Of a DNA stretch of 64,000 nucleotides, positions 29,576-47,458 are shown piece by piece. The DNA is taken from the IMG/VR virus record IMGVR_UViG_3300023179_004149, positions 186,001-250,000 of that record; one strand, given 5' to 3'. Positions within the stretch are counted from its first letter, which is position 1. Each line of letters opens with the position of its first letter. Made by a program: the position numbers and the translations under genes. The notes under the pieces were generated by a model. It ran no database searches. It was not told the DNA's origin and was given only the letters and a program-made list of their open reading frames with translations.

Positions 29576-29676
29576 CAGTATAAATTTTTTATAATAAATA
29601 GTCGTGAAATCTTCATTAATACCGAACTATTTATAATAAATTATTTATAAACAAGATCGATAACCAACTCCATAAA

Positions 29677-29858: not shown

Positions 29859-29859
29859 A

Positions 29860-30840: not shown

Positions 30841-30841
30841 T

Positions 30842-31468: not shown

Positions 31469-32372
31469 AGATTTAATACACCAATATGTAAGTACAGGTA
31501 CTCAATTACCAGAACACCAATTGACTCAACTCAACACGAACCAATTGAAGAGTTATTTCAGACAACGTATTCTCGCTCAAGAATATGGCGTTGCTTTTCA
31601 ACAATATGAATATTTATTAGCCCCAGATGAAATAAAACCATTCATCATCAAATCAATCGCAAACGATGATGAATTTATTGATTTTTTGAATGGTAAGTCA
31701 CCAGAACGCTACGAAACGGAGGATAGGTATTATCATCGTTATGAACCAAAAATCGATTTCGCCGCCCTTATAAAAATGATATTAGAATCATACACTGAGG
31801 AAACACAAAATCCAAATCTATGGGCTATTAAAGAATTTATTGTTGGGATGGTTAGCACACCAGAAAATCAAAAAATTTATAATATTAAGGCCGACACCCA
31901 AGAGATATATAACATTATGTTGTCAACACCAGATTGTGGAAAAGATAAAACGGAAATGAATTATATATACTATATTTTAAAAACAACAGACACGCTAACC
32001 CCATTTAAAACATTTGCAAAAGATAAATTCGGGGCTTATTTGGAAATATTAAAAAATAAATCAAGTGATGATAAGTGGGAGAAGTTTGGAAACATATTCA
32101 AAACAACACCCATACCAAAACAAATAATAGAATTATCCAATACTTATGATTCTATGGGTGATGCTTTTTTATGGTATATGCCTAATGATGTGTTCTATGG
32201 GTTATTAGATTCTAAACACCCATTACATAGAATTAGCTTAATACCAGAGAAAAAAGTGAAACGGATGCTTCATAACGTATTTACTAAATACACCCAGGGT
32301 AACCCAGAAGAATACGCACAAGGTTTTACCAATCCTAAAGAAGTTATCCAAATTTATAATATGTATTATTAA
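31458..32372 (+). CDS. Hypothetical helical protein with N-terminal module shared with 30842
   Basis: MTNKDLIHQYVSTG vs MTPQDLIQQYVNTG. Confidence 0.7.
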   Translation: MTNKDLIHQYVSTGTQLPEHQLTQLNTNQLKSYFRQRILAQEYGVAFQQYEYLLAPDEIKPFIIKSIANDDEFIDFLNGKSPERYETEDRYYHRYEPKIDFAALIKMILESYTEETQNPNLWAIKEFIVGMVSTPENQKIYNIKADTQEIYNIMLSTPDCGKDKTEMNYIYYILKTTDTLTPFKTFAKDKFGAYLEILKNKSSDDKWEKFGNIFKTTPIPKQIIELSNTYDSMGDAFLWYMPNDVFYGLLDSKHPLHRISLIPEKKVKRMLHNVFTKYTQGNPEEYAQGFTNPKEVIQIYNMYY

Positions 32373-32578
32373 CTTTCCATATAACCCGTCATTTGATCGG
32401 TTGCACCCAAATCTGTACCAGTCCTAATCTCAGCGTCTTCGCCGAATGAATCCCTGAATCCTGGGGGTATTGAGGTGGCACCAACACCAACGGTGTTATC
32501 ACCACCCTCAAGCACATCTGACCATTGTTTGATTTTTTTGATTTCCTGTTCCAATGATATTTTTTCTGTTTTTTTCAT
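32369..32578 (-). CDS. Small protein with leader-like N-terminus
   Basis: SLEQEIKKIKQW...LE, TATTTATT upstream. Confidence 0.6.
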   Translation of the reverse strand: MKKTEKISLEQEIKKIKQWSDVLEGGDNTVGVGATSIPPGFRDSFGEDAEIRTGTDLGATDQMTGYMES

Positions 32579-32646
32579 TTTTTTTGTGTTTTTAAAATAA
32601 ATAGTTGAACTTTGGTCATGAGCATATATTCTTATGATTTGGTAAT

Positions 32647-32670
32647 GGGATAGGGGATAGGGGGCTTGGG
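32647..32670 (+). other. Intergenic G-quadruplex-forming motif
   Basis: GGG-ATA-GGGG-ATA-GGGGG-CTT-GGG in an AT-rich divergent intergenic region. Confidence 0.5.
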
Positions 32671-32691
32671 TATTAAGAACGTGTAAATTTT

Positions 32692-32720
32692 AAAAAAGCG
32701 GGTAAATTACCCGCTTTTTT
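32692..32720. terminator. Terminator-like hairpin
   Basis: aaaaaagcgggt-aaatt-acccgcttttt. Confidence 0.65.
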
Positions 32721-32748
32721 TATATATTTATATGTATAAAACATATAA

Positions 32749-35382
32749 ATGACAATGAAAATTGTAATTACTGAAGAGCAACTTCAAAAATTATCCGAAT
32801 ATATGATTTCAAATAAATTATTTGAGGGTGAGTTTAGGTTAGATACGACCAACACCACACAAATAGATCATATATTTAATATATTTAAACAATCATACGA
32901 GAAATCTACTGGTGGTTCCTGGGATAAATCTAAATTTTTATCAAGAGCTAGTGATTGGTTATTTTTTGGTGATATGGATGGTTTTATTGCGGTAAGACCT
33001 CAGAAATCAGGTTTATACAAGTTAGTGGGTGTGGCTGGCTCACCAAAAAGCATATTAAGCGCTTTGAGTGAAATCGAATCCAAAAACATACCAGTATGGG
33101 GTATGGTTACTCAAAACATACAGACAATGCTCCAAAAGAAAGGATTTATAACACCAACACCCGAGCAATTACAACTACTATACAAATCCATACCATCATC
33201 CGTATTCGGCGGAGCCGAAACTCAGCAGAATCCTGACGGTAGCTTAACGTTAAAATATAACGATGTTGGTGACGCAACAAAATTCTTTGTTGGTAACGAA
33301 ATGTATTTCAATGCAATGAAGACCATGTTTGGGGATAAATTCAACCTGGATGAGGCAAGATCAAACCCAGAAAAAAATCCGAGAGTTACATTCGGGATGT
33401 TCATGGATAATCTGGTAAATAAATATACATATGAAAATATATTTGTGTCATTTAGAAATGATTTACATGTAACAGATGTAAATGTTAATAACAAATACAG
33501 CACCCCAACTGGTGTTTATTCATACCCGCTTATTTCATATTTCAGAAACAAATACGATTTATCCAGGATGGATGAAGGTATGTTCAGAGAAGCATTCCCA
33601 TACCAATCTAAATTACCTTATATGTATTTTATTGTCTTAAAATCACATAACGGTATCCTGGATGAAAACACAACTTTTGAGCAGGTTGTTCCTTACGTTA
33701 AAAAGATAATGGATCTTTATGGTGACATTACACCCGTATATAAAACATGTGAATTATATTTGAATAAAGATTTTAAATCAACATATAATTCTTCCCCTTA
33801 TCATGAAGCACATAACTTTTGGTTATTTCTGTATGAGGTTGCGGCCTATATAACTAAGAATAAAAAACAACATGCGATTAATATTATTTGTACTAAAATA
33901 GGTGTTAATGGCTTTGTTGACTATAAAGGTAACGGATATATCCACCCGTCAGAGCCAAAACAAGCGGTGTTCTTTAGAATTAAACCAATTGCTGATGTTC
34001 TAATTTATAAAACCCAGATAACCAATTCTAATGATAAATTTGAATCATATTTAAAACAATTAAAACCAGGTGTGAAAAATCAGGTGTTGGTGAATAAATT
34101 ATTGGATTTTAACTTAATCTTCAATTACAATCAAGTTAATAGGATCGTTAATGCTTCAACGGATCAGCTCGATACGGCTTTAAGATTAATAATTAAAGAA
34201 GCTAATAAAATGGATCTGTCTAACTCATATATGGATAGTGTATTTTTCGCTGTTACAGAACCAGGTGGTAAAGATAAATTGGCCCTTGCTTTGCTCGATT
34301 CAAAATTAATCTACCACCATTCAATTGTTACGATGCTGGGACACGTATCGGACGAAAATCTTTTTGCTGAAAAACTATTAGAGAAATCGGAAAGTTTTAA
34401 TAATTACAAAATAGTAAACGAAATATTATTTTATTTAAAAGACCCGATTAAAGGGGCTAAAGATATTTTGGCTAAATTGGATCTTGAATTTGCCAGCGTG
34501 GAAATAATACAAATATTGATCGAACATGGTGGTGATGTATTAGCATATTTAATAACAAATAAAGTTTTTGGTAAAGAAAATTATCACGACTTCATTAATA
34601 CAATTCTTACACGTGTTAAAGATAATCTAAAATACTGTGTGTTCCTAATCAAAAAAGAAAATAAAAATATTAGTAGATTGACCTTAGATACTATTTTCTC
34701 ATGGGTTGACCTACCAACAGATAGAGCTAAATTAATGAAAATAGTTCTACAACTATTAGATTATCAACCAAGGCCAGCTATTTTAAAGTTTATATTAAGT
34801 AATAGTCCAGATTTATACAATGTTTTAAATGCGATCTACACCAAACAAAACGGATTTACCGATGAACAATACGTTATGTTATTTACCTCACAATATCTCA
34901 GCGGTAAAAACTATTTCTTTGTTCTTGATAAATGGCTCGAAAAGCTTAAAACTAAAGAAGGCCTTACTGCCGATGAAATATTCTTTAGTGGAACAATTGG
35001 AAATAAAATACGTGGTTTAAGTGACGAGGAAGGGTATGAGAACGTTAGAACAAAATTAATGGATACATACGTCGAATTGGTTAATAAAGTAATATCAAAA
35101 GTTGATGATCCAGTTTTGGTTTATCAAAAATTATTTAAACTCAATTTTATTTCAGCTGATAAATTATTGATCAAACTCATCACACAAATTAGTCCAGAAA
35201 ACGGAGAAATGTTAGCTAATGATATCCAGGATAAAAAGGGTGCTGATATGTTCAACCCTATTTATGCATTCTCTAATAAACTAACTGATGAATTAAATAA
35301 CGCAAAAACAAATAAAACATACGATATCCTAAAACGCATGGATAATGTGATCGAAGCCTTTTATAACGTAACCAATTTATAA
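32749..35382 (+). CDS. Multi-domain probable head-packaged protein
   Basis: Leader MKIVITEEQLQKLSE...LFE, internal NLDE|ARSNPE, a module ending GFVD.KG.GYIHPSEP.Q.VFF (possibly ART-like), and helical repeats. Confidence 0.7.
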   Translation: MTMKIVITEEQLQKLSEYMISNKLFEGEFRLDTTNTTQIDHIFNIFKQSYEKSTGGSWDKSKFLSRASDWLFFGDMDGFIAVRPQKSGLYKLVGVAGSPKSILSALSEIESKNIPVWGMVTQNIQTMLQKKGFITPTPEQLQLLYKSIPSSVFGGAETQQNPDGSLTLKYNDVGDATKFFVGNEMYFNAMKTMFGDKFNLDEARSNPEKNPRVTFGMFMDNLVNKYTYENIFVSFRNDLHVTDVNVNNKYSTPTGVYSYPLISYFRNKYDLSRMDEGMFREAFPYQSKLPYMYFIVLKSHNGILDENTTFEQVVPYVKKIMDLYGDITPVYKTCELYLNKDFKSTYNSSPYHEAHNFWLFLYEVAAYITKNKKQHAINIICTKIGVNGFVDYKGNGYIHPSEPKQAVFFRIKPIADVLIYKTQITNSNDKFESYLKQLKPGVKNQVLVNKLLDFNLIFNYNQVNRIVNASTDQLDTALRLIIKEANKMDLSNSYMDSVFFAVTEPGGKDKLALALLDSKLIYHHSIVTMLGHVSDENLFAEKLLEKSESFNNYKIVNEILFYLKDPIKGAKDILAKLDLEFASVEIIQILIEHGGDVLAYLITNKVFGKENYHDFINTILTRVKDNLKYCVFLIKKENKNISRLTLDTIFSWVDLPTDRAKLMKIVLQLLDYQPRPAILKFILSNSPDLYNVLNAIYTKQNGFTDEQYVMLFTSQYLSGKNYFFVLDKWLEKLKTKEGLTADEIFFSGTIGNKIRGLSDEEGYENVRTKLMDTYVELVNKVISKVDDPVLVYQKLFKLNFISADKLLIKLITQISPENGEMLANDIQDKKGADMFNPIYAFSNKLTDELNNAKTNKTYDILKRMDNVIEAFYNVTNL

Positions 35383-35383
35383 C

Positions 35384-36502
35384 ATGAAACTAAACGAACA
35401 AATATCAAGAATGAAATCCATCATGGGTATCAAAGAATCTATACGTGCTTCCGAAGCAACAAACCAAATAGATTCAATCTTAACCGTATTACACGGTAAG
35501 AGAAACCTGGCATTCATTACATTTGGTGATCTAAATCCAACAAATAAACAAACGGTGACTAAACTAATCAACTCAGACCCCTCTTTAAACTCAATACACG
35601 TCAAAAAGAATCCTCTTATGGGATTTGTGATATATAGAGAGGGACACGAGAAAGAAGCCCAGGAATTGGCTAATTTGGCCAATAGATACGGTGGTTATTT
35701 ATCCGTGGATGCAACCAAAGAAGATTCAATCAGAATCGGACAATTGCTCGATTACGATCCTCAAGATATTCAAGATTATATAAACAAACATTATGATGAA
35801 TATGGCGTGAATATTCGCACTGGTAACTTGTTTGAATTTGATTCACCCGATCAAAACCCATCCGCTATTTCAGTTCTGGGGTTGGATGAGGTGGCTAAAA
35901 CAGTGAGTGATTTACCTGCCGATACTGGCCTATACCACCAAACAAATATTAATATTGGAGACCAGTTTGTGTTATACTCAGCATCAGAAGATAAAGTCTA
36001 TGGTGGGATTAATATATATAATACAGATGAAGACCCTAATGTTTATATGGTGTCACGTGTGTCAGCCAACGAAAGTTTCGGCCCCCTATTGTATGATATG
36101 ATGTTATCATACGTATATCCTAAACCACTCATTCCAGATCGCAATACGATATCAAAAGATGCAATAAAGGTTTGGACATATTATTTCAATAATAGAAATG
36201 ATATAAAAAAGGAACCAATAGATATTGATGATCAATTATATAGCACAATCTATCCCTACGAACGAGAAATCGATCCCGATGTTCTAAAAGATCTACTTTT
36301 TGAACCCGAATACAAAGATACAATACACGAGTTGGATATCTATAATTCCAAATATATCGGAAAACCTTTGAATATACAACCGCTGTTAATTAACGCCAAT
36401 AAACAACTAAAATTAAAAAATGTAAACCTAAACGACTTAATCAGTAGATCGGGTAAGCATTACGACCAATCAAAAGGTGTACCCAGTGATTACGACATAT
36501 GA
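35384..36502 (+). CDS. Leader-tagged two-module protein, C-terminal GNAT-like
   Basis: MKLNEQISRMKSIMGIKE, internal LFE/LDE, VSRVSANESFGPLLYD...SKDAIKVW. Confidence 0.7.
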   Translation: MKLNEQISRMKSIMGIKESIRASEATNQIDSILTVLHGKRNLAFITFGDLNPTNKQTVTKLINSDPSLNSIHVKKNPLMGFVIYREGHEKEAQELANLANRYGGYLSVDATKEDSIRIGQLLDYDPQDIQDYINKHYDEYGVNIRTGNLFEFDSPDQNPSAISVLGLDEVAKTVSDLPADTGLYHQTNINIGDQFVLYSASEDKVYGGINIYNTDEDPNVYMVSRVSANESFGPLLYDMMLSYVYPKPLIPDRNTISKDAIKVWTYYFNNRNDIKKEPIDIDDQLYSTIYPYEREIDPDVLKDLLFEPEYKDTIHELDIYNSKYIGKPLNIQPLLINANKQLKLKNVNLNDLISRSGKHYDQSKGVPSDYDI

Positions 36503-36900
36503 AACTTAACGAACAAATAACAAAAATGAAATCTATGATGGGACTAAAAGAAAATATCCAATACTATGGAATTGTTAACCCAGAAGATAGAAATTGGCTC
36601 AGAATCAAAGGAAGAAAATCCTATAGCGGCGGCGAACTCTCACCAATCATCATAGATGGCGTTATGGTCGGTGGAATACATATAGATAAAATGTCGGGCG
36701 TGTGGGGTATCGATTATCTCGAAATTAAACCAGAATTCCAAAACAAAGGTACCCTAAGAAAAATCATATACGATCAAGCTGACGATGGTGTGGTTAAATT
36801 CATTAGCGCAAGCGATGAACTCCAACAAAAATTAACTACCTATGGTGAAGTAACAACCGATCCAAACACGGATATAACAACATTAACTATTACAAAATGA
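36499..36900 (+). CDS. Leader-tagged GNAT-like acetyltransferase
   Basis: MKLNEQITKMKSMMGLKE, IDYLEIKPEFQNKG (motif A-like). Confidence 0.7.
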   Translation: MKLNEQITKMKSMMGLKENIQYYGIVNPEDRNWLRIKGRKSYSGGELSPIIIDGVMVGGIHIDKMSGVWGIDYLEIKPEFQNKGTLRKIIYDQADDGVVKFISASDELQQKLTTYGEVTTDPNTDITTLTITK

Positions 36901-37517
36901 ACCTTAACGAACAATTAAATATAATGAAAACCATGATGGGTATCAAAGAAGATGATATAATCATCGATAAAAATCCCAACATTATGCACTTTTTTCATGG
37001 TGGTGACCTGGATGAGGTTAAACAAGACCTCATCCAAAGATCCGACAGACAAGTTCATGGCCCTGGCCTTTATCTTACAACAAATTGGGAGAGAGCAAAG
37101 AAATACGCCAAAGGCGGTAGAAAAATGTATATTGTGTCTGTGGAGAAAGGCAATAATCTCGATGATAAAGACATCGATATGGTTGCGCTCACACAATTCC
37201 TTAAACAAAACCTTTCACCCAAAAAAGTACAATATGTGCTCGATAGAGCCAATACCAGATTGCACGGTGGTAAAATACCAGCTTATATCGTTAATAACAT
37301 ACTTATAGATAGCGGATTCCTCAAATCAAATTTTTCATTAATGTGGAAAACATTCCTTATAGGTGTCGGCATTGATTACGTTCTTGATGAAACAGCTTTC
37401 GGCGGCGAAGGACAAATGATGGTATTATACAACACCAATAAAATAAAAAATATCAGGAGAATCATGCCAAATGATAAACTTCCAACATACGATTTAAGAC
37501 CATACAATGAAACTTAA
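36897..37517 (+). CDS. Leader-tagged ADP-ribosyltransferase-fold protein
   Basis: MNLNEQLNIMKTMMGIKE, FFHGG...GPGLYLTT...AKKYA. Confidence 0.7.
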   Translation: MNLNEQLNIMKTMMGIKEDDIIIDKNPNIMHFFHGGDLDEVKQDLIQRSDRQVHGPGLYLTTNWERAKKYAKGGRKMYIVSVEKGNNLDDKDIDMVALTQFLKQNLSPKKVQYVLDRANTRLHGGKIPAYIVNNILIDSGFLKSNFSLMWKTFLIGVGIDYVLDETAFGGEGQMMVLYNTNKIKNIRRIMPNDKLPTYDLRPYNET

Positions 37518-38409
37518 CGAACAACTGAATAAAATGAAATCAATGATGGGATTACAAACCATCAACGAATACGTCACACAACATGATGTATATCTTCGTG
37601 ACTATTTTAATATGACCGAAGAGCAAAAGAAAAACTCTTTGCCCTTTATGTACCCATGGTTGTTCAGCGATTTTCTTGAAGAAAAAGATATCGAATTTAA
37701 AAGACCAACAAAAGCTTATTTTGATGCTTACGGTGAAGAACAACCTGGTGATGAATATGAGGATTATGAAATCGTTGATATCTTACAACACAAAGATAAA
37801 CCAGTGTTCGACGCTTTCGCCGATTATCTTTTTGATAAAGTGGAACGCAATGAACTTTCGGTTGACGATACAGAATATCCAGCCTGGTCATATATAACAC
37901 ACCCAAAATTGATAACAAACCAATGGTTAATACACTTCACCGAAGAACCATGGAAAATAGCTCGTGAAGGATTCACACGTGGTGTATCTGAATTAGACAA
38001 GTTGCACCTAACAACAAGACTCGGCGAATTCGATAAAAAATACGGCGGCTATAACTTCGCATTTAGAGCCGATATATATAAAAGATACGCAAGAAGAGGT
38101 TATATGCACGGAGGCGGATATAAATACGGAAACGAAGCAGTTATGTTCATTGGATCTGGTATAGAAGTCATACACCACGGCGATGAAGAACCACAAGTAA
38201 TCTTCTGGGGTAAAAAAGCAAGAAATATCGTGCCGATAACACAGGAATACGGCGACGACTATGCGGTACACAATATTAAAAAAGGCGGTATTGTTTACAA
38301 AAGCCAAGACCTGGACGACGTGGTTTCTTGGGTTATGAGAAACTATGATAGATATAAAAATGTGATTCAATACGAACCCACAAGAACAAAAGAACCTGAC
38401 AAATATTAA
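37507..38409 (+). CDS. Leader-tagged protein, possible ART fold
   Basis: MKLNEQLNKMKSMMGL..INE, WLIHFT...EGF...GYNFAF...EEPQVIF. Confidence 0.6.
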   Translation: MKLNEQLNKMKSMMGLQTINEYVTQHDVYLRDYFNMTEEQKKNSLPFMYPWLFSDFLEEKDIEFKRPTKAYFDAYGEEQPGDEYEDYEIVDILQHKDKPVFDAFADYLFDKVERNELSVDDTEYPAWSYITHPKLITNQWLIHFTEEPWKIAREGFTRGVSELDKLHLTTRLGEFDKKYGGYNFAFRADIYKRYARRGYMHGGGYKYGNEAVMFIGSGIEVIHHGDEEPQVIFWGKKARNIVPITQEYGDDYAVHNIKKGGIVYKSQDLDDVVSWVMRNYDRYKNVIQYEPTRTKEPDKY

Positions 38410-38410
38410 T

Positions 38411-38995
38411 ATGAACCTTAACGAACAAATCTCCAGGATAAAAGAAATGATGGACATAAACGAAGCACTTCAACCCATCACCGTTTATCACGGATCCAAT
38501 ACCAAAATCACAAACTTCGTGGATGACTTTGTGGGCGGAGAACAAGCCAACGACCTGGAAGGGCCTGGCATATACTTCACAACAATAGCGGAAAATGCCG
38601 AATATTTTGGAACATACGTACATGAAGTAACAATAACACCAAGAAAACTACTAACCGAAAGCCCAAATGGGGGCACCACCATCGAATTAACAAAATTAGC
38701 CAAAATGGCACCCGATTGGGAAAGCACAGCTCAAAATTGGGACGAAAACCCACAGATAGGTTTAAATAAAGCTATCAGAGACTTTATTTCATATAACCAC
38801 AACCAAAAAGATAGGTTCCTACAGGTATGGATAGACTTCTATAAAAATGACCCAGTGGATTATGTTAGAAACTGTGTTAAACTCGGATATGATGGTATCG
38901 TTGTTAATAGAGATGTTATAGACGGAAAACGACTTAAACACTATATCATATATAACCCAAGCATAATACAAATAAAAAAAGTAACCCAGGTATAA
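38411..38995 (+). CDS. Leader-tagged ADP-ribosyltransferase-fold protein (ART-PolyVal-like)
   Basis: MNLNEQISRIKEMMDINE, VYHGS...GPGIYFTT..ENAEYF...GYDGIVV...YIIYNP..IQI. Confidence 0.8.
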   Translation: MNLNEQISRIKEMMDINEALQPITVYHGSNTKITNFVDDFVGGEQANDLEGPGIYFTTIAENAEYFGTYVHEVTITPRKLLTESPNGGTTIELTKLAKMAPDWESTAQNWDENPQIGLNKAIRDFISYNHNQKDRFLQVWIDFYKNDPVDYVRNCVKLGYDGIVVNRDVIDGKRLKHYIIYNPSIIQIKKVTQV

Positions 38996-39004
38996 CCCTG
39001 GGTT
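38983..39004. terminator. Bidirectional terminator
   Basis: aacccagg-tataa-cctgggtt between convergent genes. Confidence 0.75.
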
Positions 39005-39016
39005 TTATTTTTAATT

Positions 39017-41602
39017 TTACTCTAATGCGTTTAATACTTTTTCCTTTATTGTTTGAACACGATTATGATTCGATTTCGCCATCTTTTCAACAATCAAAGC
39101 CCTCAACCGATCAGCCACCTTAGGGTCCTTCAATCTATATACCTTTAATAACGAATCGTACTTACCCAATAAAGATTGATCCTCATCCGATATACCAATC
39201 AAATTATAAAACACATACCCATTAACCAATTGTAAAACCCTATCCTTACCAATTTGATCCTTTAGTTTGATGAACCGTTGAACAATCTCATCATCTGATT
39301 CCTTCTTAACATTTAATTCTTTATATAATGGTTCCAATTCAGCGCCAACCAAATCAAAATACATCTCCCTCAACTCAGCTGGAAACTTATTAACAACAAA
39401 CGGCGATATGGTCTTAACTATCGTATCGGTTAACACATGGACAATATGTTTGATAACATCAAACCCCTTGTTTTTGTTAAATAAACCAAATAACACATCG
39501 TATCGACCATGATTTATCAATTCCCTGACATAAATGTCTGTGTTCATGTTATTAATCGTTCTACCATGATACAAGACACCAAAGGCATCCTCAACAAGAA
39601 CATCCAAAGATTGTGACCAATATGATTCCATCCCCTTCAACACACCCCTTTCATTACGATACTTTAACTCATACTCCGTTAACCACCCAATCACAAAATT
39701 CTTAAACTTCTGATTGAACACCCCATAATAAGGCCCAGTAAAATGACAATAAATACCAGAGGCAAATCTACCAAGAGGATCCTTAATATTCCAATCACCC
39801 TCCTTTATTAAATAAAAAACAAAACTATTATCCCTTATCATATTGCCAACACCCGCACCATAACCTTCACCACCATCATCAATAGTTGATTTGATCATCG
39901 TTTGCTTTATATCCTTAATACCAGAAAGATTCTCACATGTGCTAAAATGATCACTATCTCCCATATTTGCAATATCATGCGAATGCCTGGATATAACAGC
40001 ATACATCTTACCTTCACCACCAGCCCTGGTCATCGAATCCAAATAACTCGTGTATCTTTTCAATAAACCAACATCATACTTTTGCAATAACTTGGTTAAT
40101 TTAACCTCCTGGTTACTCTTCTCATCCTTCACCTTGTTACCGTCAAAATCAACCAACACAAAACCATTATCGGCAATAACACGATCAATATCATGCCTTA
40201 ACTTATCACTAATATTAACATCCAAATTTAAAGTCGGTGTTTTCCTGGTCGGCGTAATCATCTTCCCAGTATCGAGATCATAATATAAACGATATACATT
40301 CTTACCAAATAAATTATCCATATTAGCATCAAAACGCTTTTGATAGGCCCTGGCTTGCTTGGATAAATTCAACTCAATGGCCTCACCCAACCACATCACC
40401 CCCCTCATGCGGGAAACCTCTTCATTTAATTTATTTAACGTCTCTTCTGCAAATTCTAATGACTCTTTCTCATTATCATCAAGCTCTCTATTAATACCAC
40501 TTATAACTTTTCGTATTATATCCTCTTCCCACCTAAACGCATACAACACATACGATAACAAACTCTCACCACGCCTAATAATTCTCTTATCATATATTAT
40601 TTTCATTAAGTTATAATTAATTATCATCTTAATGTTTTTATCCGTTATGTTATTGGCCATATCAGGGTCTTCAATTAATTTGGTATGTAATGATTGCAAA
40701 TAAACTTTCTTTAACTCATCTCGCAACCCATCAAAATCAAAAAACCAATTATAATACCTCTTAACCAAAACCTTGCTACGTTCCAAAGGCATCGAGTTTA
40801 ACTCATCCATCTGTTTCTTATCATAAATTACATCATTTGATAATAACCTGTTTTCTAATGAGTCGTGTGTTCCAATAACACCTTTCTTATTTATATTAAT
40901 AAATAAGGTGTTTATATCAACAGACTTCATATCACCATCAATCTTATTAAGATCATAGATAACCGAACCATGTAACGTATTATCCCAATCCCAAACACCT
41001 GAAACATTAACACCATTATAGCCATTCCACTCCATAATCCTGGTGGAAAATGAAGCCGAACTACTGGCTTGCGTTTTATTATACATCGAATTAAAATCAC
41101 TCGCGGCTTGTTTTAACATATTGATAAACTCACGATACTTTGGAACCTTTAAACCCAAATAACTTAAATTATTAACAACAACCAAATACCGCTTGCTTAT
41201 ATCGCCATGCCCATATAAAAAACTATAAAATATATCATTCAACTCCTTCAATGTGTTAAATAACCACTTACCTTGTTCATTGCTCTTTACTCGATATAAA
41301 TTTTTATAGAAATCCATATTAACCCTATAAACACTATCACCAACCTGAATCAACCCAGACATATCCTTAAAAGCAGATCCATATTTTTTATCATAATCAG
41401 CTTTATCCCTTAACTTATAAGTTGAAAAATACATACCCGAACCAAAGTGACCCGTGCCCCTACCTTGCATTCTCCATATGTTATCAGAACCATACGGTTT
41501 TAAATTAGATAAATTAACACTACCCGAATGATAGTTGTAATCGGCCTCAATTAATAAAACCATTTTTTTTATTTGTTGTAACTCAGAAAGTAACTTATCC
41601 AT
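39017..41602 (-). CDS. Fused two-cassette leader-tagged polyprotein, N-module ART-like
   Basis: N-leader LLSELQQIKKMV.LIE, YHSG...GHFGSGMYFST, and a second internal leader LNKLNEEVSRMRGVMWLGE at 40391-40438. Confidence 0.75.
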   Translation of the reverse strand: MDKLLSELQQIKKMVLLIEADYNYHSGSVNLSNLKPYGSDNIWRMQGRGTGHFGSGMYFSTYKLRDKADYDKKYGSAFKDMSGLIQVGDSVYRVNMDFYKNLYRVKSNEQGKWLFNTLKELNDIFYSFLYGHGDISKRYLVVVNNLSYLGLKVPKYREFINMLKQAASDFNSMYNKTQASSSASFSTRIMEWNGYNGVNVSGVWDWDNTLHGSVIYDLNKIDGDMKSVDINTLFININKKGVIGTHDSLENRLLSNDVIYDKKQMDELNSMPLERSKVLVKRYYNWFFDFDGLRDELKKVYLQSLHTKLIEDPDMANNITDKNIKMIINYNLMKIIYDKRIIRRGESLLSYVLYAFRWEEDIIRKVISGINRELDDNEKESLEFAEETLNKLNEEVSRMRGVMWLGEAIELNLSKQARAYQKRFDANMDNLFGKNVYRLYYDLDTGKMITPTRKTPTLNLDVNISDKLRHDIDRVIADNGFVLVDFDGNKVKDEKSNQEVKLTKLLQKYDVGLLKRYTSYLDSMTRAGGEGKMYAVISRHSHDIANMGDSDHFSTCENLSGIKDIKQTMIKSTIDDGGEGYGAGVGNMIRDNSFVFYLIKEGDWNIKDPLGRFASGIYCHFTGPYYGVFNQKFKNFVIGWLTEYELKYRNERGVLKGMESYWSQSLDVLVEDAFGVLYHGRTINNMNTDIYVRELINHGRYDVLFGLFNKNKGFDVIKHIVHVLTDTIVKTISPFVVNKFPAELREMYFDLVGAELEPLYKELNVKKESDDEIVQRFIKLKDQIGKDRVLQLVNGYVFYNLIGISDEDQSLLGKYDSLLKVYRLKDPKVADRLRALIVEKMAKSNHNRVQTIKEKVLNALE

Positions 41603-41605
41603 ACA

Positions 41606-42850
41606 CTATTTTAATTTATCAAACTCTCTATCATAAGAAGATTTTTCATCCAACGGATTCTTTAGATGATTGGTTACATAATCCTCAAATCGGAAAAAAG
41701 CACCATTAATTTTATTCAAAAGATCTTCTGAAATATCTGGCGTTATTTTTAAAGGTTCATTAACCTCATTCAAACCCATAACCTTTTTTATTTGATTAAG
41801 CCCCTCATCTAACATATCTGAACTAATACCTAAAGTATTTAAATACTTATTAAAATCCATATCATACACTTCATACCATTTAATGTTGTTACTCAAATAT
41901 AAAGAATAACTATCTGGTAAATAGGTCATCAAAAACCTAGCATCATCAATATCCATGTTAAAATCCATTATAACATACACATACCCCAAACCAGCATAAT
42001 CTTCCCAATAATTCTCACTACCAACTTGTGCAAAACACCAATTACTATAACAACCCAATTGCTGCATAGCCTCATAATCATTAACCTTGATTACCAGAAC
42101 ATCGTTTTTATCATATACCAAATCAGCATCAAGATTCGGCAATAAATCCAAAACATGTTTACGACCCGTTTCAGCGCCATCACCAATATAACTCATGGTC
42201 TTACTCAAATGATCAAAACCCGCAACAATATCTTTAAAACTCCTACCACTACGAAATAGTTTAGGCAACATCTCATCGTGTTTTTTCTTAGGTAAAGCCT
42301 GTAATATTTTATTAATAACCCTCAACCCCTCATACACTTTTTTAAAATTATATGAAATAAACTGTTGGTAATTCGGGTCGGCTGTATCAATGTTATATAT
42401 ATATTCTTTAATTGGTTTCATCATATTACGCTTAATAATATCTGATAATTTACCCCAACTTTTAACCAAATAACTCCTTTCCTTTAACATCTCATATAAA
42501 GACATTACATGAAATCTATTATCCTGGGTTTCATATTTGTAGTCGGTTAAATTACCTGGAACAGGAAATAATTGTTTATCATACACTCTTACTAAATCGT
42601 AAAAATCCGCAACAATATCCATATTCCTCTCAGTATATTTACTCTGGTCAGATTCAAACCTATTCATCTGATAATAAAAATCAGTAACCAACTTCGTAAA
42701 ATTATTACCGTTTGTAAGATCAACAATAGCTTCCTTGACACGAGGCTCTAACTTACCCGAATTAAAATAAACTTTATCGGCTAATTGAACATTCTCATTC
42801 AAACCCATCATTACCCTCATACGGAAAACTTGCTCGTTTAATTTATTCAT
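41606..42850 (-). CDS. Leader-tagged hypothetical protein
   Basis: MNKLNEQVFRMRVMMGLNE, LGCYSNWCF module, internal LDEGLNQIKKVMGLNE near the C-terminus. Confidence 0.75.
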   Translation of the reverse strand: MNKLNEQVFRMRVMMGLNENVQLADKVYFNSGKLEPRVKEAIVDLTNGNNFTKLVTDFYYQMNRFESDQSKYTERNMDIVADFYDLVRVYDKQLFPVPGNLTDYKYETQDNRFHVMSLYEMLKERSYLVKSWGKLSDIIKRNMMKPIKEYIYNIDTADPNYQQFISYNFKKVYEGLRVINKILQALPKKKHDEMLPKLFRSGRSFKDIVAGFDHLSKTMSYIGDGAETGRKHVLDLLPNLDADLVYDKNDVLVIKVNDYEAMQQLGCYSNWCFAQVGSENYWEDYAGLGYVYVIMDFNMDIDDARFLMTYLPDSYSLYLSNNIKWYEVYDMDFNKYLNTLGISSDMLDEGLNQIKKVMGLNEVNEPLKITPDISEDLLNKINGAFFRFEDYVTNHLKNPLDEKSSYDREFDKLK

Positions 42851-43453
42851 TTATACTCCACTAAAACTTAATTGGTTATTATCATTTATATATAAATCAA
42901 CTGACCCCATATCACGTGATGCTTTCATTAATATATTCTCGTCCTCATCATCATAACCCCTATCAAAAAAACCAGCACCGTGACCATTACGTGTCAACCA
43001 AAAGTCATGACCAAGTTGTTCAGCACCAAACTCATTAATCGCCCTATGAATTAAATCCTCACCACATAACTGAATGAATTTCTTAATACCTATATAAGCA
43101 TCAATTAACGAATCTGACTCAATATCTTCACGACTGAATGATACAATACCCTTATTATTCAACTGCGATGTTAATCTAATTAATTTATCCAATTCGGTAT
43201 CATCCTCATCCTCATCATCGTCGTCATAAACACTATCATCACCTTGTTCATCTCTCAAAGATTCCTCCTCAGTCCATAATGCCGCTTCAATATACCCCAT
43301 CAATATCTTATTTATAATATCGGTAGATATATCAGATTCGTCTAATACACTACCATCATCCTGAATATCCTTGGCAAATTGATACCTACCCGAATTTTCA
43401 GATATACCCATTATCGCCCTCATGCGGGACACTTGTTCATTTAATTTATTCAT
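42851..43453 (-). CDS. Leader-tagged hypothetical protein (GHDFWLTRNGHGAGF motif)
   Basis: Start reassigned to MNKLNEQVSRMRAIMGISE at 43453. Confidence 0.75.
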   Translation of the reverse strand: MNKLNEQVSRMRAIMGISENSGRYQFAKDIQDDGSVLDESDISTDIINKILMGYIEAALWTEEESLRDEQGDDSVYDDDDEDEDDTELDKLIRLTSQLNNKGIVSFSREDIESDSLIDAYIGIKKFIQLCGEDLIHRAINEFGAEQLGHDFWLTRNGHGAGFFDRGYDDEDENILMKASRDMGSVDLYINDNNQLSFSGV

Positions 43454-43466
43454 AACGATATCAATT

Positions 43467-44081
43467 TTATTTTGTTTCATAATTATCTGGTACCAGGTTA
43501 CTAAGATGCTCCACAAACGTATCAAACTCGAAAAATTTGGGATTGTATTTATATGGTACCTCTTTACCATCTGGACGTAAAACAACAACTTTATAATCAC
43601 TAAATTTACTATGAGTATCTCTAAATCCAGATATAATATCCACAATATAGGAATAATGATTCGTATCAGTTAATATAATTCTGAATTTGATCCTATCTGG
43701 TGTATTCTCGAATATATTAACCTTCACCACAACAGCTTTAACGTCACCAATATTTATTGTTTTACCCACATATGAATTAATTAGATCCTCTGAAAATATA
43801 CCAGATACATACCAGTGCTTATTCCCTGATTTATCAAGAATTGGTTTAAAATCACCAAACTCCAAATCTATAGGTTCACCAGAAACATCAACATCCGCAA
43901 CATCCGATTTTTTAAAATTACCAAATCTGCCAACTTTATCATCTGGCTTTAACTTCTTCCTGGTAGTGTCAAGATTCTTGGTCTTATTCCAATACCAATC
44001 AGAATCATCCCAAGATTCACTTAACCCCATCATCCGCCTGATGTTTTGAATCTCCTCATTTAATGTTTGTTTCTGTTTCAT
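43467..44081 (-). CDS. Leader-tagged hypothetical protein
   Basis: MKQKQTLNEEIQNIRRMMGLSE. Confidence 0.75.
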   Translation of the reverse strand: MKQKQTLNEEIQNIRRMMGLSESWDDSDWYWNKTKNLDTTRKKLKPDDKVGRFGNFKKSDVADVDVSGEPIDLEFGDFKPILDKSGNKHWYVSGIFSEDLINSYVGKTINIGDVKAVVVKVNIFENTPDRIKFRIILTDTNHYSYIVDIISGFRDTHSKFSDYKVVVLRPDGKEVPYKYNPKFFEFDTFVEHLSNLVPDNYETK

Positions 44082-44082
44082 A

Positions 44083-44190
44083 TTACTTTAATTCACTTAT
44101 GATTCTTTGATTTTCCCAGATACGTTTCAAATTCTTTAATACGTTCTTTCTAATCTTATTCTTTTTTTGCTTGGGTTTTGCTTTTGCCAT
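44083..44190 (-). CDS. Small basic peptide (35 aa)
   Basis: MAKAKPKQKKNKIRKNVLKNLKRIWENQRIISELK, TATTTATG upstream, stop 1 nt before the next ATG. Confidence 0.55.
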   Translation of the reverse strand: MAKAKPKQKKNKIRKNVLKNLKRIWENQRIISELK

Positions 44191-44235
44191 AATATAACTT
44201 TTACTACTCATAAATATAAAAAAATCCACAATAAA

Positions 44236-44267
44236 TTTGCCTATGCACCAAAATATTCGTATATTTG
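44236..44267 (+). promoter_or_regulatory. Bacteroidota-type promoter
   Basis: TTTG-N20-TATATTTG, ATG at 44275. Confidence 0.75.
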
Positions 44268-44274
44268 CTCCGTT

Positions 44275-45627
44275 ATGGCACGGTACATCGAAATAGAAAG
44301 AAAAGAAGCGGAAAAAGAAAAGGCTTACCAAGAAGCCCTGGATCGCCACGCACTGGAACGTAAAGTAAACAGAGCTAAAACAGCACAACTAGTTGAATGG
44401 ATCTGCTCAAACAAACTCAAACCAACCAACTACCTCTATACTTCCAATAACTTCGATCTTTGGAGCACCATGGAAGTAACCGCCACATTATGCCGCAAAT
44501 CCGATAAATTCAAAAAAATCGCAACTCATATAGCAGAATGGGCCCCTAACTTCTATGAAAATAGGGATAACATACTAGCCCTCAGAGGTATCTCAGAAGT
44601 TTATTCAGAAAGACTCAGAAACATAGAAGATTGGGAACCAAAAAAACTTAATCACAAATCTATACTCATCGAAATCCTAAACCACCTATTCACCAATTAC
44701 CAATCACCCCAATTCCTCATTAACGGATTTATCAACAATAACCATGAGTCAATGCTGCTCTTTATACACCTGGGACAAGGTAAGTCCATGAAAACATGGC
44801 CATTTATCCCAGAATTTAATATACCCAAAAAAGCACTACACCACCTCTACACCACACCAAACTATTGCACATATAACGAAGCTTTCAGAAGAGCACAAAT
44901 TATTCACCTCGGCGGAGATGATAAACTCTTCCGACTCCTTATGTCAACAAAACTCGAACACCACACCAATAATATTAATAAACACAGAGCCAAAGACGAA
45001 CCATTCTGGGAATCGGTTATCAAATTCTTTATCGAACACCAAATGATGAACCCAGATAAAGTAGGTGAAATTATCGACTATATCTACGACCAAAAATTTG
45101 CCCTTAAAAGAAAACCAGGACCTAACGGTACAACGGTGAACGAACCAGATCAACCCAACTTTACCATGAAAGGTAGAACACCAATGTCACTGATCCAACA
45201 GTCAGATGATTGGCACTACTTTGTCGCCATGAATAAAAAACGTGAGGAAGACCCTAAAGAATGGGAACCAATCGATCTACCTGATTGGGAATGGAAAGAA
45301 GGTGAAGAAAATAACTTCGCTAAAATGAGATACAACATCACCCAGCTCACAAAAACCAAAGAACTTATCGCAGAAGGTAATAAAATGCACCACTGTGTCG
45401 CCACTTATGCCAGCTCATGTATTAAGAAATGGTGCTCCATCTTCTCGTTCCGTGTAACCAACCACACCCAGGGCAAATTCGATGAACCAGAAGTAACCCT
45501 GGAAATCAGATCTAAAACCATAGTACAGGCCAGAGGTAAATACAACAGAACACCTCACCCACACTATATGCAAATGATCAAATCATGGGCCGATATTAAC
45601 GGAGTGAAATTCTCAAATTATATGTAA
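44275..45627 (+). CDS. PcfJ-like domain protein
   Basis: C-terminal L..EG.KMHHCVATY...IFSFR...TLEI....IVQARGKYN pattern. Family name recalled from memory. Confidence 0.8.
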   Translation: MARYIEIERKEAEKEKAYQEALDRHALERKVNRAKTAQLVEWICSNKLKPTNYLYTSNNFDLWSTMEVTATLCRKSDKFKKIATHIAEWAPNFYENRDNILALRGISEVYSERLRNIEDWEPKKLNHKSILIEILNHLFTNYQSPQFLINGFINNNHESMLLFIHLGQGKSMKTWPFIPEFNIPKKALHHLYTTPNYCTYNEAFRRAQIIHLGGDDKLFRLLMSTKLEHHTNNINKHRAKDEPFWESVIKFFIEHQMMNPDKVGEIIDYIYDQKFALKRKPGPNGTTVNEPDQPNFTMKGRTPMSLIQQSDDWHYFVAMNKKREEDPKEWEPIDLPDWEWKEGEENNFAKMRYNITQLTKTKELIAEGNKMHHCVATYASSCIKKWCSIFSFRVTNHTQGKFDEPEVTLEIRSKTIVQARGKYNRTPHPHYMQMIKSWADINGVKFSNYM

Positions 45628-45653
45628 AAATGAACCTATTTATAATAAAAAAT

Positions 45654-46187
45654 ATGGTACTTACAGAACAAATAAATAGGATTAAAGAAATGATGGGATT
45701 AGATCCCAAAAAACGATTTGAGTATAAACCCATCACATATGAAGAATTTGATGACGCACTATCAGATATCTCCACATTAAACCTGGAAGACGATCAACTG
45801 GGTATACCTGAATTTAATCAGAATACCGATAATTTTTTATTACGAATCGATGACATCGACCTCTATATAAAAAATAGACAACAGTTACCAGAAAGTGGCC
45901 CCTATGAATTATTAATTGATAATAACGATGGCGATACCATAGGTTTCATTCGCGGAACCAAATTTAATAACATCCTTTCATTTAATCTCGTATATATTGC
46001 ACCAGAAGAAAGAGGTAATGGCATCGGTACCAGTATCTACCAATACTTTTTGAACCACGGTTATATAATGAAGACCGATAAGGAAATTAGTGATTCCACT
46101 CATTCCATATATACTAACCTCGCAAAATCTGAATATACGCCCATTATGTTCGCCGATCATAGAGTGGGACTGATTAAATCATCATAA
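45654..46187 (+). CDS. Leader-tagged GNAT-like acetyltransferase
   Basis: MVLTEQINRIKEMMGL, LVYIAPEERGNGIGTSIY (motif A), TATTTATA upstream. Confidence 0.8.
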   Translation: MVLTEQINRIKEMMGLDPKKRFEYKPITYEEFDDALSDISTLNLEDDQLGIPEFNQNTDNFLLRIDDIDLYIKNRQQLPESGPYELLIDNNDGDTIGFIRGTKFNNILSFNLVYIAPEERGNGIGTSIYQYFLNHGYIMKTDKEISDSTHSIYTNLAKSEYTPIMFADHRVGLIKSS

Positions 46188-46199
46188 ATTTTCCCAGAA

Positions 46200-46360
46200 A
46201 TTTTTTTGAAAAACCAAACCCAAATAAAACAAAGGTCGATTTTCTGAAAAAAACCAACCCCAAAATTTTTTTTTGAAAATAATTCACATAGATATTTGAC
46301 CCCCTTATACGCCCTCCGCCCCTCCCCTATGGGAGGGGGATACGGGGGAGGGGAGGGGTA
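46200..46360. other. Candidate replication origin or packaging element
   Basis: Two A/C-tract direct repeats, then a C-tract block and a G-tract block with the hairpin CCCCTCCC-CTAT-GGGAGGGG, at an apparent strand-skew switch. Confidence 0.4.
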
Positions 46361-46373: not shown

Positions 46374-46481
46374 TTACTTATGAGGATAAAATAATATAAA
46401 GCTAATTAGTATAGCTGATACAGATAGAAAAATTCCGAATATGGCACTGGCTGCCATGAATAATATTAGTTTCTTGTCCAT
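46374..46481 (-). CDS. Small membrane peptide (35 aa, not in ORF track)
   Basis: MDKKLILFMAASAIFGIFLSVSAILISFILFYPHK. Confidence 0.45.
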   Translation of the reverse strand: MDKKLILFMAASAIFGIFLSVSAILISFILFYPHK

Positions 46482-46591: not shown

Positions 46592-46618
46592 CAAGGTAGG
46601 GTATTTAACCCTACCTTG
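46592..46618 (-). terminator. Intrinsic terminator
   Basis: caaggtaggg-N7-ccctaccttg with a T-run on the minus strand. Confidence 0.8.
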
Positions 46619-46631: not shown

Positions 46632-47303
46632 TTAGGCGAGTTCTAATGTTTCGCCCTTACTGGTAAATGAAGTTAACACATTATCAATTTTGAATGTGCG
46701 TAGGTCTTCTTTACGTAGGGTATCACGTATTATGTTTTTTGCTACAGTAAGGGGAGCGCTGGCGACTTTTTTATATTCGCCCTTTACTGTTGTTTCCTTG
46801 CTTACTTTTTTACCGAATATAAGCAAGTTATTTGTAGATGTGTTAAACCATAATACAGGGTTAAGTTTGATATTATTATTTTCCCTATCTGTTGGTTGTT
46901 GGTCGGTTTGTTTCATTTCGATTAATGCCGTAGGCAACAAATCCAAAATTTCGTTATATGGTTGGGTTGGGTTGGCAAATTTTTTCAGGTCGTATTTACC
47001 AAAATTGTGGCTCATTACCTTTTCTCTTAATACGTCCTTTATCGTATCAATATCGTAGCTATGTAGTGTTAAACTATCTTTGTTTAACATATTTTCATAG
47101 CTGATACCTATGTTAACCACGTAGTTAGCAAGTTCGGTGTTATCCGAATTATCGCTATTATAGTCCTTAATACTGATAAACTTTGCGCCCTTTACAGTTG
47201 TGGCGTCAATAAGTTTAAACAGGTCGGTACGACTTAAATTGGGATAGGCGGAAAGAATAGCCAAAATTGTTTGTTCCTGAATAGTGAATGTTTGTTGTAA
47301 CAT
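46632..47303 (-). CDS. Hypothetical protein
   Basis: Long ORF, start placed at MLQQTF. Confidence 0.7.
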   Translation of the reverse strand: MLQQTFTIQEQTILAILSAYPNLSRTDLFKLIDATTVKGAKFISIKDYNSDNSDNTELANYVVNIGISYENMLNKDSLTLHSYDIDTIKDVLREKVMSHNFGKYDLKKFANPTQPYNEILDLLPTALIEMKQTDQQPTDRENNNIKLNPVLWFNTSTNNLLIFGKKVSKETTVKGEYKKVASAPLTVAKNIIRDTLRKEDLRTFKIDNVLTSFTSKGETLELA

Positions 47304-47458
47304 AAAAAAAGTTTTAGGTAACTGCGACATTGCAATTACACCACAAAGGTCTAATTTATTTTTGAATTTTCGCAATCTATTTTGTTAAAAAGTTGTTAAA
47401 GAAAAATGACTCTGATATATACCAGAGTCATGTTAGATATTTAAAAATTTAAATATAT

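What the first reader, a model, noticed from the sequence alone, without database searches (positions are those of the whole stretch)
46190..46360. C-tract/G-tract element at an apparent strand-skew switch: candidate origin or pac site
Seen: in a convergent gap, A/C-rich direct repeats (tt.gaaaaa(aa)ccaa(a)ccc at ~46205 and ~46244) precede a GC island with C-runs then five G-runs (GGG-A-GGGGG-ATAC-GGGGG-A-GGGG-A-GGGG) and an 8-bp hairpin. By eye, genes at 36-46 kb use C/A-ending codons on + and T/G-ending codons on -, while minus-strand genes right of 46.4 kb use many C-ending codons. This suggests the + strand changes from C-rich to less so here. Established: a C-to-G skew switch marks bidirectional origins. 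The skew was not computed.
Basis: partly seen in the sequence, partly recalled or inferred. Interest (0 to 1): 0.6.

Follow-up and report, generated by a model that had tools for sequence, protein, structure and literature searches.

The report
Conserved phage element bounding a strand-skew domain
A unique, conserved non-coding element in a 321-kb freshwater jumbo phage sits exactly where a 10-20 kb stretch of one-sided, mitochondria-like strand bias stops, which fits a one-way replication start site better than a packaging site or a plain terminator, but this is not proven.

Summary
Window 46190-46360 lies in a convergent gap of a 320,934-bp jumbo-phage genome. It holds two A/C-rich repeats, a C-run tract, an 8-bp hairpin and five G-runs.

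- **Uniqueness.** It is the densest G/C-run cluster and the most stable 70-nt fold in the genome. All its motifs are single-copy.
- **Conservation.** The element sits at the same syntenic spot in ten related phage contigs, including ones whose neighbouring gene is only 46-52% identical. Conserved sequence blocks keep a fixed spacing. There is no RNA covariation, Rfam hit or conserved reading frame.
- **Raw skew.** Whole-genome GC skew follows gene orientation and has no extremum here.
- **Third-position skew.** Codon third positions show a strong bias (+ strand C>G, A>T) in genes of both orientations. It grows over about 20 kb toward the element and stops there. Eight of nine related loci show the same pattern.

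The polarity fits DNA synthesis that starts at the element and runs leftward, displacing the minus strand. This resembles T4 oriF, ColE1 or the mtDNA D-loop. I rate this reading at 0.4.

Rivals are a strong terminator, a genome end or pac site, and a recombination boundary. No raw reads or RNA data were available to decide.

The parts
46193..46213 (+). Repeat copy 1 (CCCAGAAA, T-run, GAAAA)
   Evidence: Direct-repeat families D2 and D3. The motif is found only at this locus in the 321-kb genome and is present in relatives.
46232..46243 (+). Conserved block AAGGTCGATTTT between the two repeat copies
   Evidence: Aligned in 8 of 9 relatives (alignment A1).
46258..46288 (+). Repeat copy 2 plus the conserved GAAAATAATTCA block
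   Evidence: The T-run, AA and TTC columns are invariant in 10 sequences.
46295..46304 (+). Invariant block TTTGACCCCC
   Evidence: Invariant or nearly so in 10 sequences. Single copy in the genome.
46300..46327 (+). C-run tract, which is a G4-type motif on the - strand. It is a variable spacer of fixed length (26-27 nt) between the two invariant blocks.
   Evidence: It stays C-rich in 8 of 9 relatives but its sequence is only 25-67% conserved.
46319..46338 (.). 8-bp hairpin core CCCCTCCC / GGGAGGGG with a CTAT loop
   Evidence: The pairing is broken in L009, L007b and L016 while the G side is kept.
46328..46343 (+). Conserved block TATGGGAGGGGGATAC
   Evidence: 87-100% identical in 7 of 9 relatives.
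46331..46358 (+). Five G-runs, a canonical G4-type motif on the + strand
   Evidence: A + strand G4 motif is present in 5 of 9 relatives.
46374..46481 (-). 35-aa hydrophobic ORF. It is the last leftward transcription unit and runs into the element.
   Evidence: It is conserved next to the element in L004, L006, L007, L008, L009 and L012.
46592..46618 (-). Ordinary intrinsic terminator (11-bp stem plus T-run) of the 247-aa gene, listed for contrast with the element
   Evidence: Inverted repeat I4 and the sequence itself.
46632..47375 (-). Conserved 222-247-aa protein that is always next to the element; function unknown
   Evidence: It is 71-75% identical in relatives whose PcfJ-like gene is 46-52% identical. 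The AlphaFold2 model has pLDDT 83 and no fold match.
44266..45627 (+). PcfJ-like gene, the syntenic left-hand marker of the element
   Evidence: PF14284, E = 6e-16. Synteny shown.
25037..46187 (.). Strand-asymmetry domain. The + strand has C>G and A>T at third codon positions in genes of both orientations, and the bias grows toward the element.
   Evidence: Spearman rho is -0.70 (p = 4e-4). Both + and - genes differ from the rest of the genome (p about 4e-5 and 3e-5).

Best explanation
The element is a cis-acting DNA site at which DNA synthesis starts and runs mainly in one direction, leftward toward lower coordinates.

**Shown**
- It is a single-copy, sequence-conserved, non-coding module. 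It has 2-3 copies of a 20-nt motif set in A/T tracts, then two invariant blocks held 26-27 nt apart by a C-rich spacer, then G-runs.
- It sits at the 3' end of a 12-kb array of leftward early genes driven by host-type promoters.
- Immediately to its left, for about 10-20 kb, the minus strand is strongly G+T-rich whatever the gene orientation. The bias is strongest next to the element and absent to its right. This holds in the window and in 8 of 9 related loci.

**Inferred**
- That composition is the signature of a strand that spends time single-stranded. It resembles the mtDNA heavy strand or a bacterial leading strand.
- A nascent strand started at the element and extended leftward would displace the parental minus strand, and the part nearest the start would be exposed longest.

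**Most likely priming route (inferred)**
- Leftward transcription of the 35-aa ORF unit enters the element.
- The RNA copied from the C-run tract is G-rich and forms a stable RNA-DNA hybrid, or pauses at the very stable hairpin.
- Its 3' end, at the edge of the A/T-rich repeats, primes the phage B-family polymerase. This is how T4 oriF/oriG, ColE1 and the mtDNA heavy-strand origin work.
- A site-specific nick would give the same footprint.
- The GC hairpin and G4-prone tract may also end both convergent transcription units and hinder a rightward fork.
For: - **Uniqueness.**
- **Conservation.** The element keeps its synteny in ten related contigs, down to relatives with 46% PcfJ identity. It has invariant blocks and fixed spacing.
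- **Orientation-independent bias in the window.** Third-position bias left of the element does not depend on gene orientation. It is graded, with rho = -0.70 and p = 4e-4.
- **Same bias in relatives.** Over ten loci and within 10 kb to the left, 41 of 42 + genes and 22 of 23 - genes have negative plus-oriented GC3 skew. To the right, 35 of 97 do.
- **Exact switch point.** The gap itself switches at the hairpin centre: GC skew is -0.55 over 46188-46330 and +0.91 over 46331-46373.
- **Leftward early transcription.** Eleven Bacteroidota-type promoters lie at 48.9-59.4 kb, ten of them leftward.
- **C-runs as template for G-rich RNA.** Present in 8 of 9 relatives. The one lineage with few C-runs (L016) has the weakest bias.
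- **DnaA boxes.** The L016/L019 lineage carries two perfect and one near-perfect DnaA box 47-97 nt from the element.
- **Precedent.** T4 oriF/oriG consist of a promoter plus an A+T-rich unwinding element, and an R-loop primes one-directional leading-strand synthesis (PMC3016281).
Against: - No direct evidence of initiation exists. Only assembled contigs were available, so there was no coverage gradient and no RNA data.
- The site is at a transcriptional convergence. The active T4 origins lie at divergences (PMC3016281).
- Replication genes are far away: PolB at 143 kb, DnaB at 100 kb.
- The site is not a genome-wide skew extremum. A second and larger third-position switch, with iteron-like repeats, lies at genome 257.5 kb.
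- DnaA boxes are absent in 9 of 10 lineages.
- The skew magnitude (up to -0.85) is unusually large for a replication effect.
- The left domain is also a hypervariable gene island, so a compositional cause linked to that island cannot be excluded.
- The polarised substitution spectrum was inconclusive.
Confidence: 0.4

Rival explanations
1. The element is an unusually strong two-way transcription terminator or insulator. It separates the leftward early array from the rightward PcfJ/GNAT genes. The strand bias to its left would be an unrelated property of that gene island.
For: It lies in a convergent gap directly after two stop codons. It has the most stable hairpin in the genome. In the window a T-rich stretch follows it on the + strand.
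Against: - The terminator scan does not flag it, and relatives have no T-run after the stem.
- Other convergent gaps manage with a compact 8-bp stem flanked by A and T runs, for example 38983-39004.
- Selection acts on sequence blocks and their spacing, not on pairing. The stem is broken in L009, L007b and L016, and there is no covariation.
- A terminator does not explain the 100 nt of conserved repeats or a bias that flips with gene orientation.
Confidence: 0.2
2. The element is a physical genome end or packaging start (cos, pac, or the junction of inverted terminal repeats). The C-tract and G-tract would be the two termini joined in circular or concatemeric DNA.
For: - Repeated motifs in bent A/T-tract DNA next to a GC-rich, partly symmetric core resemble lambda cosB-cosN (own knowledge).
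- Three independent assemblies (L006, L020, L021) and one Logan contig end inside the C/G tract.
- End-initiated strand displacement from both ends would give the observed polarities (inference).
Against: - Thirteen contigs run straight through the element.
- TerL is 57 kb away.
- The arms are imperfect and are not conserved as a palindrome.
- 5'-to-3' resection from an end here predicts the opposite bias (inference).
- Contig breaks are expected anyway at GC-run hairpins and at strain-variable junctions.
Confidence: 0.12
3. The element is a recombination hotspot or cassette boundary. It marks the edge of a hypervariable island of injected-protein genes and promotes exchange of that island between strains.
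For: - Runs from three other studies hold 100%-identical DNA only to the right of 46357 and nothing to the left.
- L007 has two partial copies of the element flanking a two-gene insertion.
- The window lacks about 45 nt that relatives carry on the right flank.
- Contigs break here.
Against: - No recombinase or homing-nuclease gene was seen among the genes next to the element.
- Exchange alone does not create a strand bias that ignores gene orientation and grows toward the site.
- This reading may be a consequence of an initiation or fragile site rather than an alternative to it.
Confidence: 0.12
4. The element encodes a small structured non-coding RNA.
For: It is a conserved non-coding sequence with strong predicted folding.
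Against: - There is no Rfam match near any gathering score.
- The consensus fold keeps only 5 invariant C-G pairs with no compensatory change.
- No host-type promoter is conserved on either strand (reading).
- An RNA gene does not explain the flanking strand bias.
Confidence: 0.06

Closest known systems
Phage T4 oriF/oriG (R-loop origins)
   Same: A compact site of about 100 nt. [quoted passage not shown]
   Different: The T4 origins use a MotA middle promoter and lie at transcriptional divergences. They have no C-run/G-run hairpin. No R-loop has been shown here.
ColE1 RNA II origin and the mtDNA heavy-strand origin with CSB II (own knowledge)
   Same: G-rich RNA over a C-rich template stabilises a hybrid that becomes the primer. 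Replication is one-way. In mtDNA the displaced strand acquires a graded G+T-rich bias, like the minus strand left of the element.
   Different: The polymerases and genome scale differ. Here the bias covers only 10-20 kb of 321 kb. Which strand carries the G-runs is not constant among relatives.
Iteron origins with an adjacent GC-rich segment or palindrome (lambda ori, RK2 oriV; own knowledge)
   Same: Repeated short motifs, an A/T-rich stretch and then a GC-rich or palindromic segment.
   Different: There are only 2-3 repeats, spaced about 66 nt apart. No initiator gene was recognised beside it. DnaA boxes occur in one lineage only.
Lambda cos (cosB-cosN) and pac sites such as SPP1 and P1 (own knowledge)
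   Same: Repeated binding motifs in bent DNA beside a GC-rich, partly symmetric core. Some contigs end here.
   Different: It is not next to the terminase genes. Most contigs cross it. Termini could not be tested.
Rho-independent terminators of this same genome
   Same: A GC-rich stem at the end of convergent genes.
   Different: The genome's own terminators are 7-13-bp stems followed directly by a T-run. The element is about 190 nt, lacks the T-run in relatives, and is conserved in sequence rather than in pairing.

Membership tests
Bidirectional origin marked by a genome-wide skew extremum | Global extremum of cumulative GC skew at the site | tested here: not met
   Raw cumulative skew turns at about 134.8 kb and follows gene orientation. 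The cumulative third-position minimum is at genome 257,471. The element sits only at a shallow local minimum.
Bidirectional origin marked by a genome-wide skew extremum | Sign switch from C-rich to G-rich on the + strand, independent of gene orientation | tested here: met
   This holds locally. Left of the element both + and - genes are C3- and A3-rich on the + strand. Right of it the bias is weakly reversed.
Iteron or DnaA-box origin | Cluster of repeated initiator-binding motifs or DnaA boxes | tested here: inconclusive
   There are 2-3 copies of a 20-nt motif. DnaA boxes occur only in the L016/L019 lineage.
Iteron or DnaA-box origin | Initiator or replication genes adjacent | tested here: not met
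   PolB is at 143 kb and DnaB at 100 kb. Neighbouring genes have no known function or fold.
Transcript-primed (R-loop) origin | Transcription directed into the element | tested here: inconclusive
   A leftward early promoter array and the 35-aa ORF unit end at the element. No RNA run holds the locus.
Transcript-primed (R-loop) origin | G-rich RNA over a C-rich template, followed by an A+T-rich unwinding region | tested here: met
   The C-run tract 46300-46327 is followed leftward by DNA of 25% GC. C-runs are present in 8 of 9 relatives.
Transcript-primed (R-loop) origin | Persistent RNA-DNA hybrid and one-directional leading-strand start | not testable with these tools
   There is only the indirect footprint of a one-sided, graded strand bias.
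Intrinsic terminator | GC-rich stem followed at once by a T/U-run | tested here: not met
   The stem is present. The scan does not call it, and relatives lack the T-run.
pac/cos packaging site | Defined DNA ends or read-start pile-up at the site | not testable with these tools
   All runs were served as contigs. Four contigs end in the element and thirteen cross it.
pac/cos packaging site | Location beside the terminase genes | tested here: not met
   The only Terminase_6N match is at genome 174.9 kb.
G-quadruplex-forming sequence | Four or more G-runs of at least 3 with loops of 1-7 | tested here: met
   46331-46358 on the + strand and 46300-46327 on the - strand. Folding was not tested.
G-quadruplex-forming sequence | Motif kept on the same strand in relatives | tested here: inconclusive
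   On the + strand it is kept in 5 of 9 relatives. On the - strand it is kept in 7 of 9 with loops up to 12.
Known RNA family (Rfam) | Covariance-model match or compensatory base changes | tested here: not met
   The best Rfam scores are 16-24 bits against gathering scores of 50 or more. None of the 5 consensus pairs covaries.

The most novel reading that the evidence does not exclude
Jumbo phages of freshwater Bacteroidota carry a mitochondrial-D-loop-like origin. An early transcript forms a G-rich RNA-DNA hybrid at a C-tract and primes one-way strand displacement. This leaves 10-20 kb of one strand single-stranded long enough to imprint mtDNA-strength skew. The exposed stretch coincides with the island of leader-tagged, probably injected effector genes, so the origin would double as a local mutator for the phage's counter-defence arsenal.
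Probability: 0.15. Interest if true: 0.85.

Novelty: new variant of a known kind. Interest (0 to 1): 0.62.

Why it matters
Replication origins and genome ends of uncultured jumbo phages are essentially unmapped. This work pairs a conserved, single-copy cis element with a conserved, orientation-independent strand-bias footprint. That gives a concrete coordinate to test by coverage profiling, DRIP or plasmid-origin assays. If the reading holds, local third-position skew becomes a way to find one-way origins in metagenomic phage genomes where whole-genome skew only mirrors transcription. It would also link replication mechanics to accelerated evolution of an effector gene island.

Tried and rejected
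**Searches that found nothing useful**
- Rfam at a permissive E-value gave only chance-level hits.
- The consensus RNA fold showed no covariation.
- Reading frames across the element are not conserved: the TTG-started frame stops in L008 and another frame stops in L015 (reading).
- Host-type (TTTG / TAnnTTTG) and sigma-70-type promoters are not conserved on either strand of the core.
- No T7-like RNA polymerase, multisubunit RNA polymerase beta or bS21 was detected in the genome. The T7-like search also rang in no control genome, so it is uninformative.
- The cultured-phage database gave one weak, unrelated hit.
- Single-protein scans of viral contigs found no relatives.
- The exact hairpin and the two-block pattern are absent from other viral contigs, apart from one relative. 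They are also absent from 185,579 bacterial genomes.

**Neighbouring genes**
- Pfam and PHROGs gave no function.
- The conserved 222-aa neighbour folds confidently but has no significant structural match: Foldseek E is at least 0.19 and VIA Z is at most 3.9.

**Analyses that did not decide**
- The polarised substitution spectrum in flanking genes was uninterpretable without better rooting and composition correction.
- Laying public runs returned only contigs, so there is no coverage, read-start or strand information.

**Readings rejected on polarity**
- A replication terminus here predicts a G/T-rich + strand on the left, the opposite of what is seen.
- End resection predicts the same wrong polarity.

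Full report
**Context.** The window is bases 186,001-250,000 of a 320,934-bp virus record. Its GC content is 34.5%. Its two ends repeat 126 nt, as a circular assembly path would. No cultured phage is close. Small genes right of the finding are each preceded by a repeated promoter of the TTTG / TAnnTTTG type that is typical of Bacteroidota (own knowledge). Eleven exact copies lie at window 48.9-59.4 kb, ten of them leftward. The host is therefore probably a freshwater Bacteroidota bacterium. No phage RNA polymerase was detected.

**The observation.**
- The gap is convergent: a GNAT-like + gene ends at 46187 and a 35-aa hydrophobic - ORF ends at 46374.
- Two A/C-rich repeat copies lie at 46193-46213 and 46258-46279.
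- A C-run tract lies at 46300-46327.
- An 8-bp hairpin pairs 46319-46326 with 46331-46338.
- Five G-runs lie at 46331-46358.

The genome holds only three G4-type motifs, and two of them abut here. There are eight runs of four or more G or C within 100 nt, against at most three elsewhere. It is the most stable of 32,087 sliding 70-nt folds, although that stability follows from its composition (z = -1.45 against shuffles). All its motifs occur nowhere else in the genome.

**Conservation.** I used the GP88-like and PcfJ-like flanking proteins to find relatives. This recovered the same gap in ten related metagenomic contigs, some from genomes of 346-359 kb.

The element is always there, between the PcfJ-like gene and a conserved 222-aa protein gene. 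This holds even where PcfJ is only 46-52% identical. The conserved parts are:
- the repeat motif, in 2-3 copies;
- a GGTCGATTTT block;
- an AGAAATAATTCA block;
- TTTGACCCCC;
- a C-rich spacer of fixed length (26-27 nt) but variable sequence;
- TATGGGAGGGGGATAC;
- further G-runs.

The hairpin pairing is not what is conserved. It is broken in three relatives while the G-side sequence is kept. The consensus fold retains five invariant C-G pairs with no compensatory change. Rfam finds nothing, reading frames are not conserved, and the pattern is absent from 185,579 bacterial genomes. The element is therefore a selected DNA-level (or possibly RNA-level) site, not a gene.

It is also more than a terminator. 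This genome's terminators are 7-13-bp stems followed directly by a T-run, and another convergent gap needs only 21 nt. The element lacks a T-run in relatives.

**Skew.** Whole-genome raw GC and AT skew follow gene orientation, with the main turn at about 134.8 kb, and show no extremum at 232.3 kb. Codon third positions, read on the + strand, are near zero over most of the genome.

From about window 25 kb to 46.2 kb they are strongly C>G and A>T in genes of both orientations. Paralogous leader-tagged genes on opposite strands have opposite coding-strand bias. The cause therefore tracks the DNA strand, not transcription or codon preference.
- The bias grows toward the element: rho = -0.70, p = 4e-4.
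- Both + genes (median -0.33 against -0.04) and - genes (median -0.38 against 0.00) differ from the rest of the genome.
- It stops at the hairpin centre: GC skew is -0.55 over 46188-46330 and +0.91 over 46331-46373.
- To the right it is weakly reversed, +0.15 to +0.29 for 5 kb, and then nil.
- Cumulative third-position skew falls most steeply from 210 to 232.3 kb. It reaches a shallow local minimum at the element and its global minimum at 257.47 kb.

The same one-sided, graded domain ending at the element appears in L008, L009, L012, L013, L014, L015, L004 and L007, with values down to -0.85. It is weak only in L016. Pooled within 10 kb to the left, 41 of 42 + genes and 22 of 23 - genes have negative plus-oriented GC3 skew. 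To the right, 35 of 97 do.

**Interpretation.** A G+T-rich minus strand, strongest beside a fixed site and decaying leftward, is what is expected if the parental minus strand is displaced and left single-stranded by DNA synthesis that starts at the element and moves left. The same logic explains mtDNA heavy-strand and bacterial leading-strand bias (own knowledge). A terminus, or 5'-to-3' resection from a DNA end, predicts the opposite sign.

The architecture suggests transcript priming as in T4 oriF/oriG, which consist of a promoter plus an A+T-rich unwinding element with one-directional leading-strand synthesis (PMC3016281). ColE1 and mtDNA CSB II work similarly (own knowledge). The relevant features here are:
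- leftward early transcription ends here;
- the C-tract would template a G-rich RNA;
- an A/T-rich repeat region lies just downstream.

One lineage adds two perfect and one near-perfect DnaA box beside the element. None of this is direct evidence, and a site-specific nick would leave the same footprint. I put this reading at 0.4.

**Other facts bearing on rivals.**
- Public runs from three other studies hold 100%-identical DNA only to the right of 46357.
- L007 has two partial copies of the element around a two-gene insertion.
- Contigs L006, L020 and L021, plus one Logan contig, end inside the C/G tract. Thirteen contigs cross it.

These facts fit a strain-level mosaic boundary, an assembly-hostile sequence or, less likely, physical ends. 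TerL is 57 kb away, and PolB and DnaB are also distant. The conserved 222-aa neighbour is a candidate binding protein, but it has no recognisable fold.

**Limits.** No step needed referral.

**Verdict.** The feature is real, unique and conserved. The skew switch is real but local and one-sided. The origin reading is favoured over the pac reading, in a modified one-way form, and remains unproven.

Noticed in passing
window 29860-46187: At least eleven genes on both strands begin with one shared N-terminal leader (LNEQ.., then M-G-L/I-x-E). One copy is internal in the 861-aa protein. One of these proteins is ART-PolyVal (PF18760) and one is GNAT-like, and relatives add NUDIX and ParB_N. The leader looks like a capsid-targeting, protease-cleaved signal on proteins injected with the DNA.
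   Followed up: partly
window 48900-59400: There are eleven exact copies of a Bacteroidota-type promoter (TTTGGTGG, spacer, TTACCTTTGC). Each overlaps a short hairpin and precedes a small gene. Ten point leftward and one rightward, at 59369. They resemble the promoter-stem-loop cassettes of T4 hyperplastic regions.
   Followed up: partly
genome 257,481-257,860 (outside the window, 7.5 kb beyond its right end): This is another convergent gap. It has GAATTC-type repeats and three GTTGYATTCA repeats. It lies at the global minimum of cumulative third-position GC skew and is flanked by genes with extreme C3 bias. It is a second origin-like candidate.
   Followed up: partly
window 32647-32670: This is the only other G4-type motif in the genome. 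It lies upstream of a small minus-strand ORF inside the skewed domain, where the bias briefly drops to about zero.
   Followed up: no
window 46357 onward; L006:7972, L020:11020, L021:8181: Three other studies hold 100%-identical DNA only to the right of the element. Three independent assemblies break inside the C/G tract. The cause could be a strain-level mosaic boundary or an assembly-hostile sequence.
   Followed up: partly
L007:9584-9848 and L007:10395-10525: Two partial copies of the element flank an insertion of two small genes. The left copy keeps the C-tract half and the right copy keeps the G-tract half.
   Followed up: partly
L016:3990-4040 and L019:1640-1700: Two perfect and one one-mismatch DnaA box (TTATCCACA) lie within 50 nt, immediately right of the element. 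This occurs in this lineage only.
   Followed up: yes
window 46632-47375 (-): This 222-247-aa protein is always next to the element. It is much better conserved than its neighbours (71-75% identity where PcfJ is 46-52%) and is restricted to this phage group (29 database hits). It has a confident AlphaFold2 model but no fold match.
   Followed up: yes
window 27815-29575 (-): The phage encodes a GAF-PAS histidine kinase. Relatives carry it together with a response regulator at the far edge of the skewed domain.
   Followed up: no
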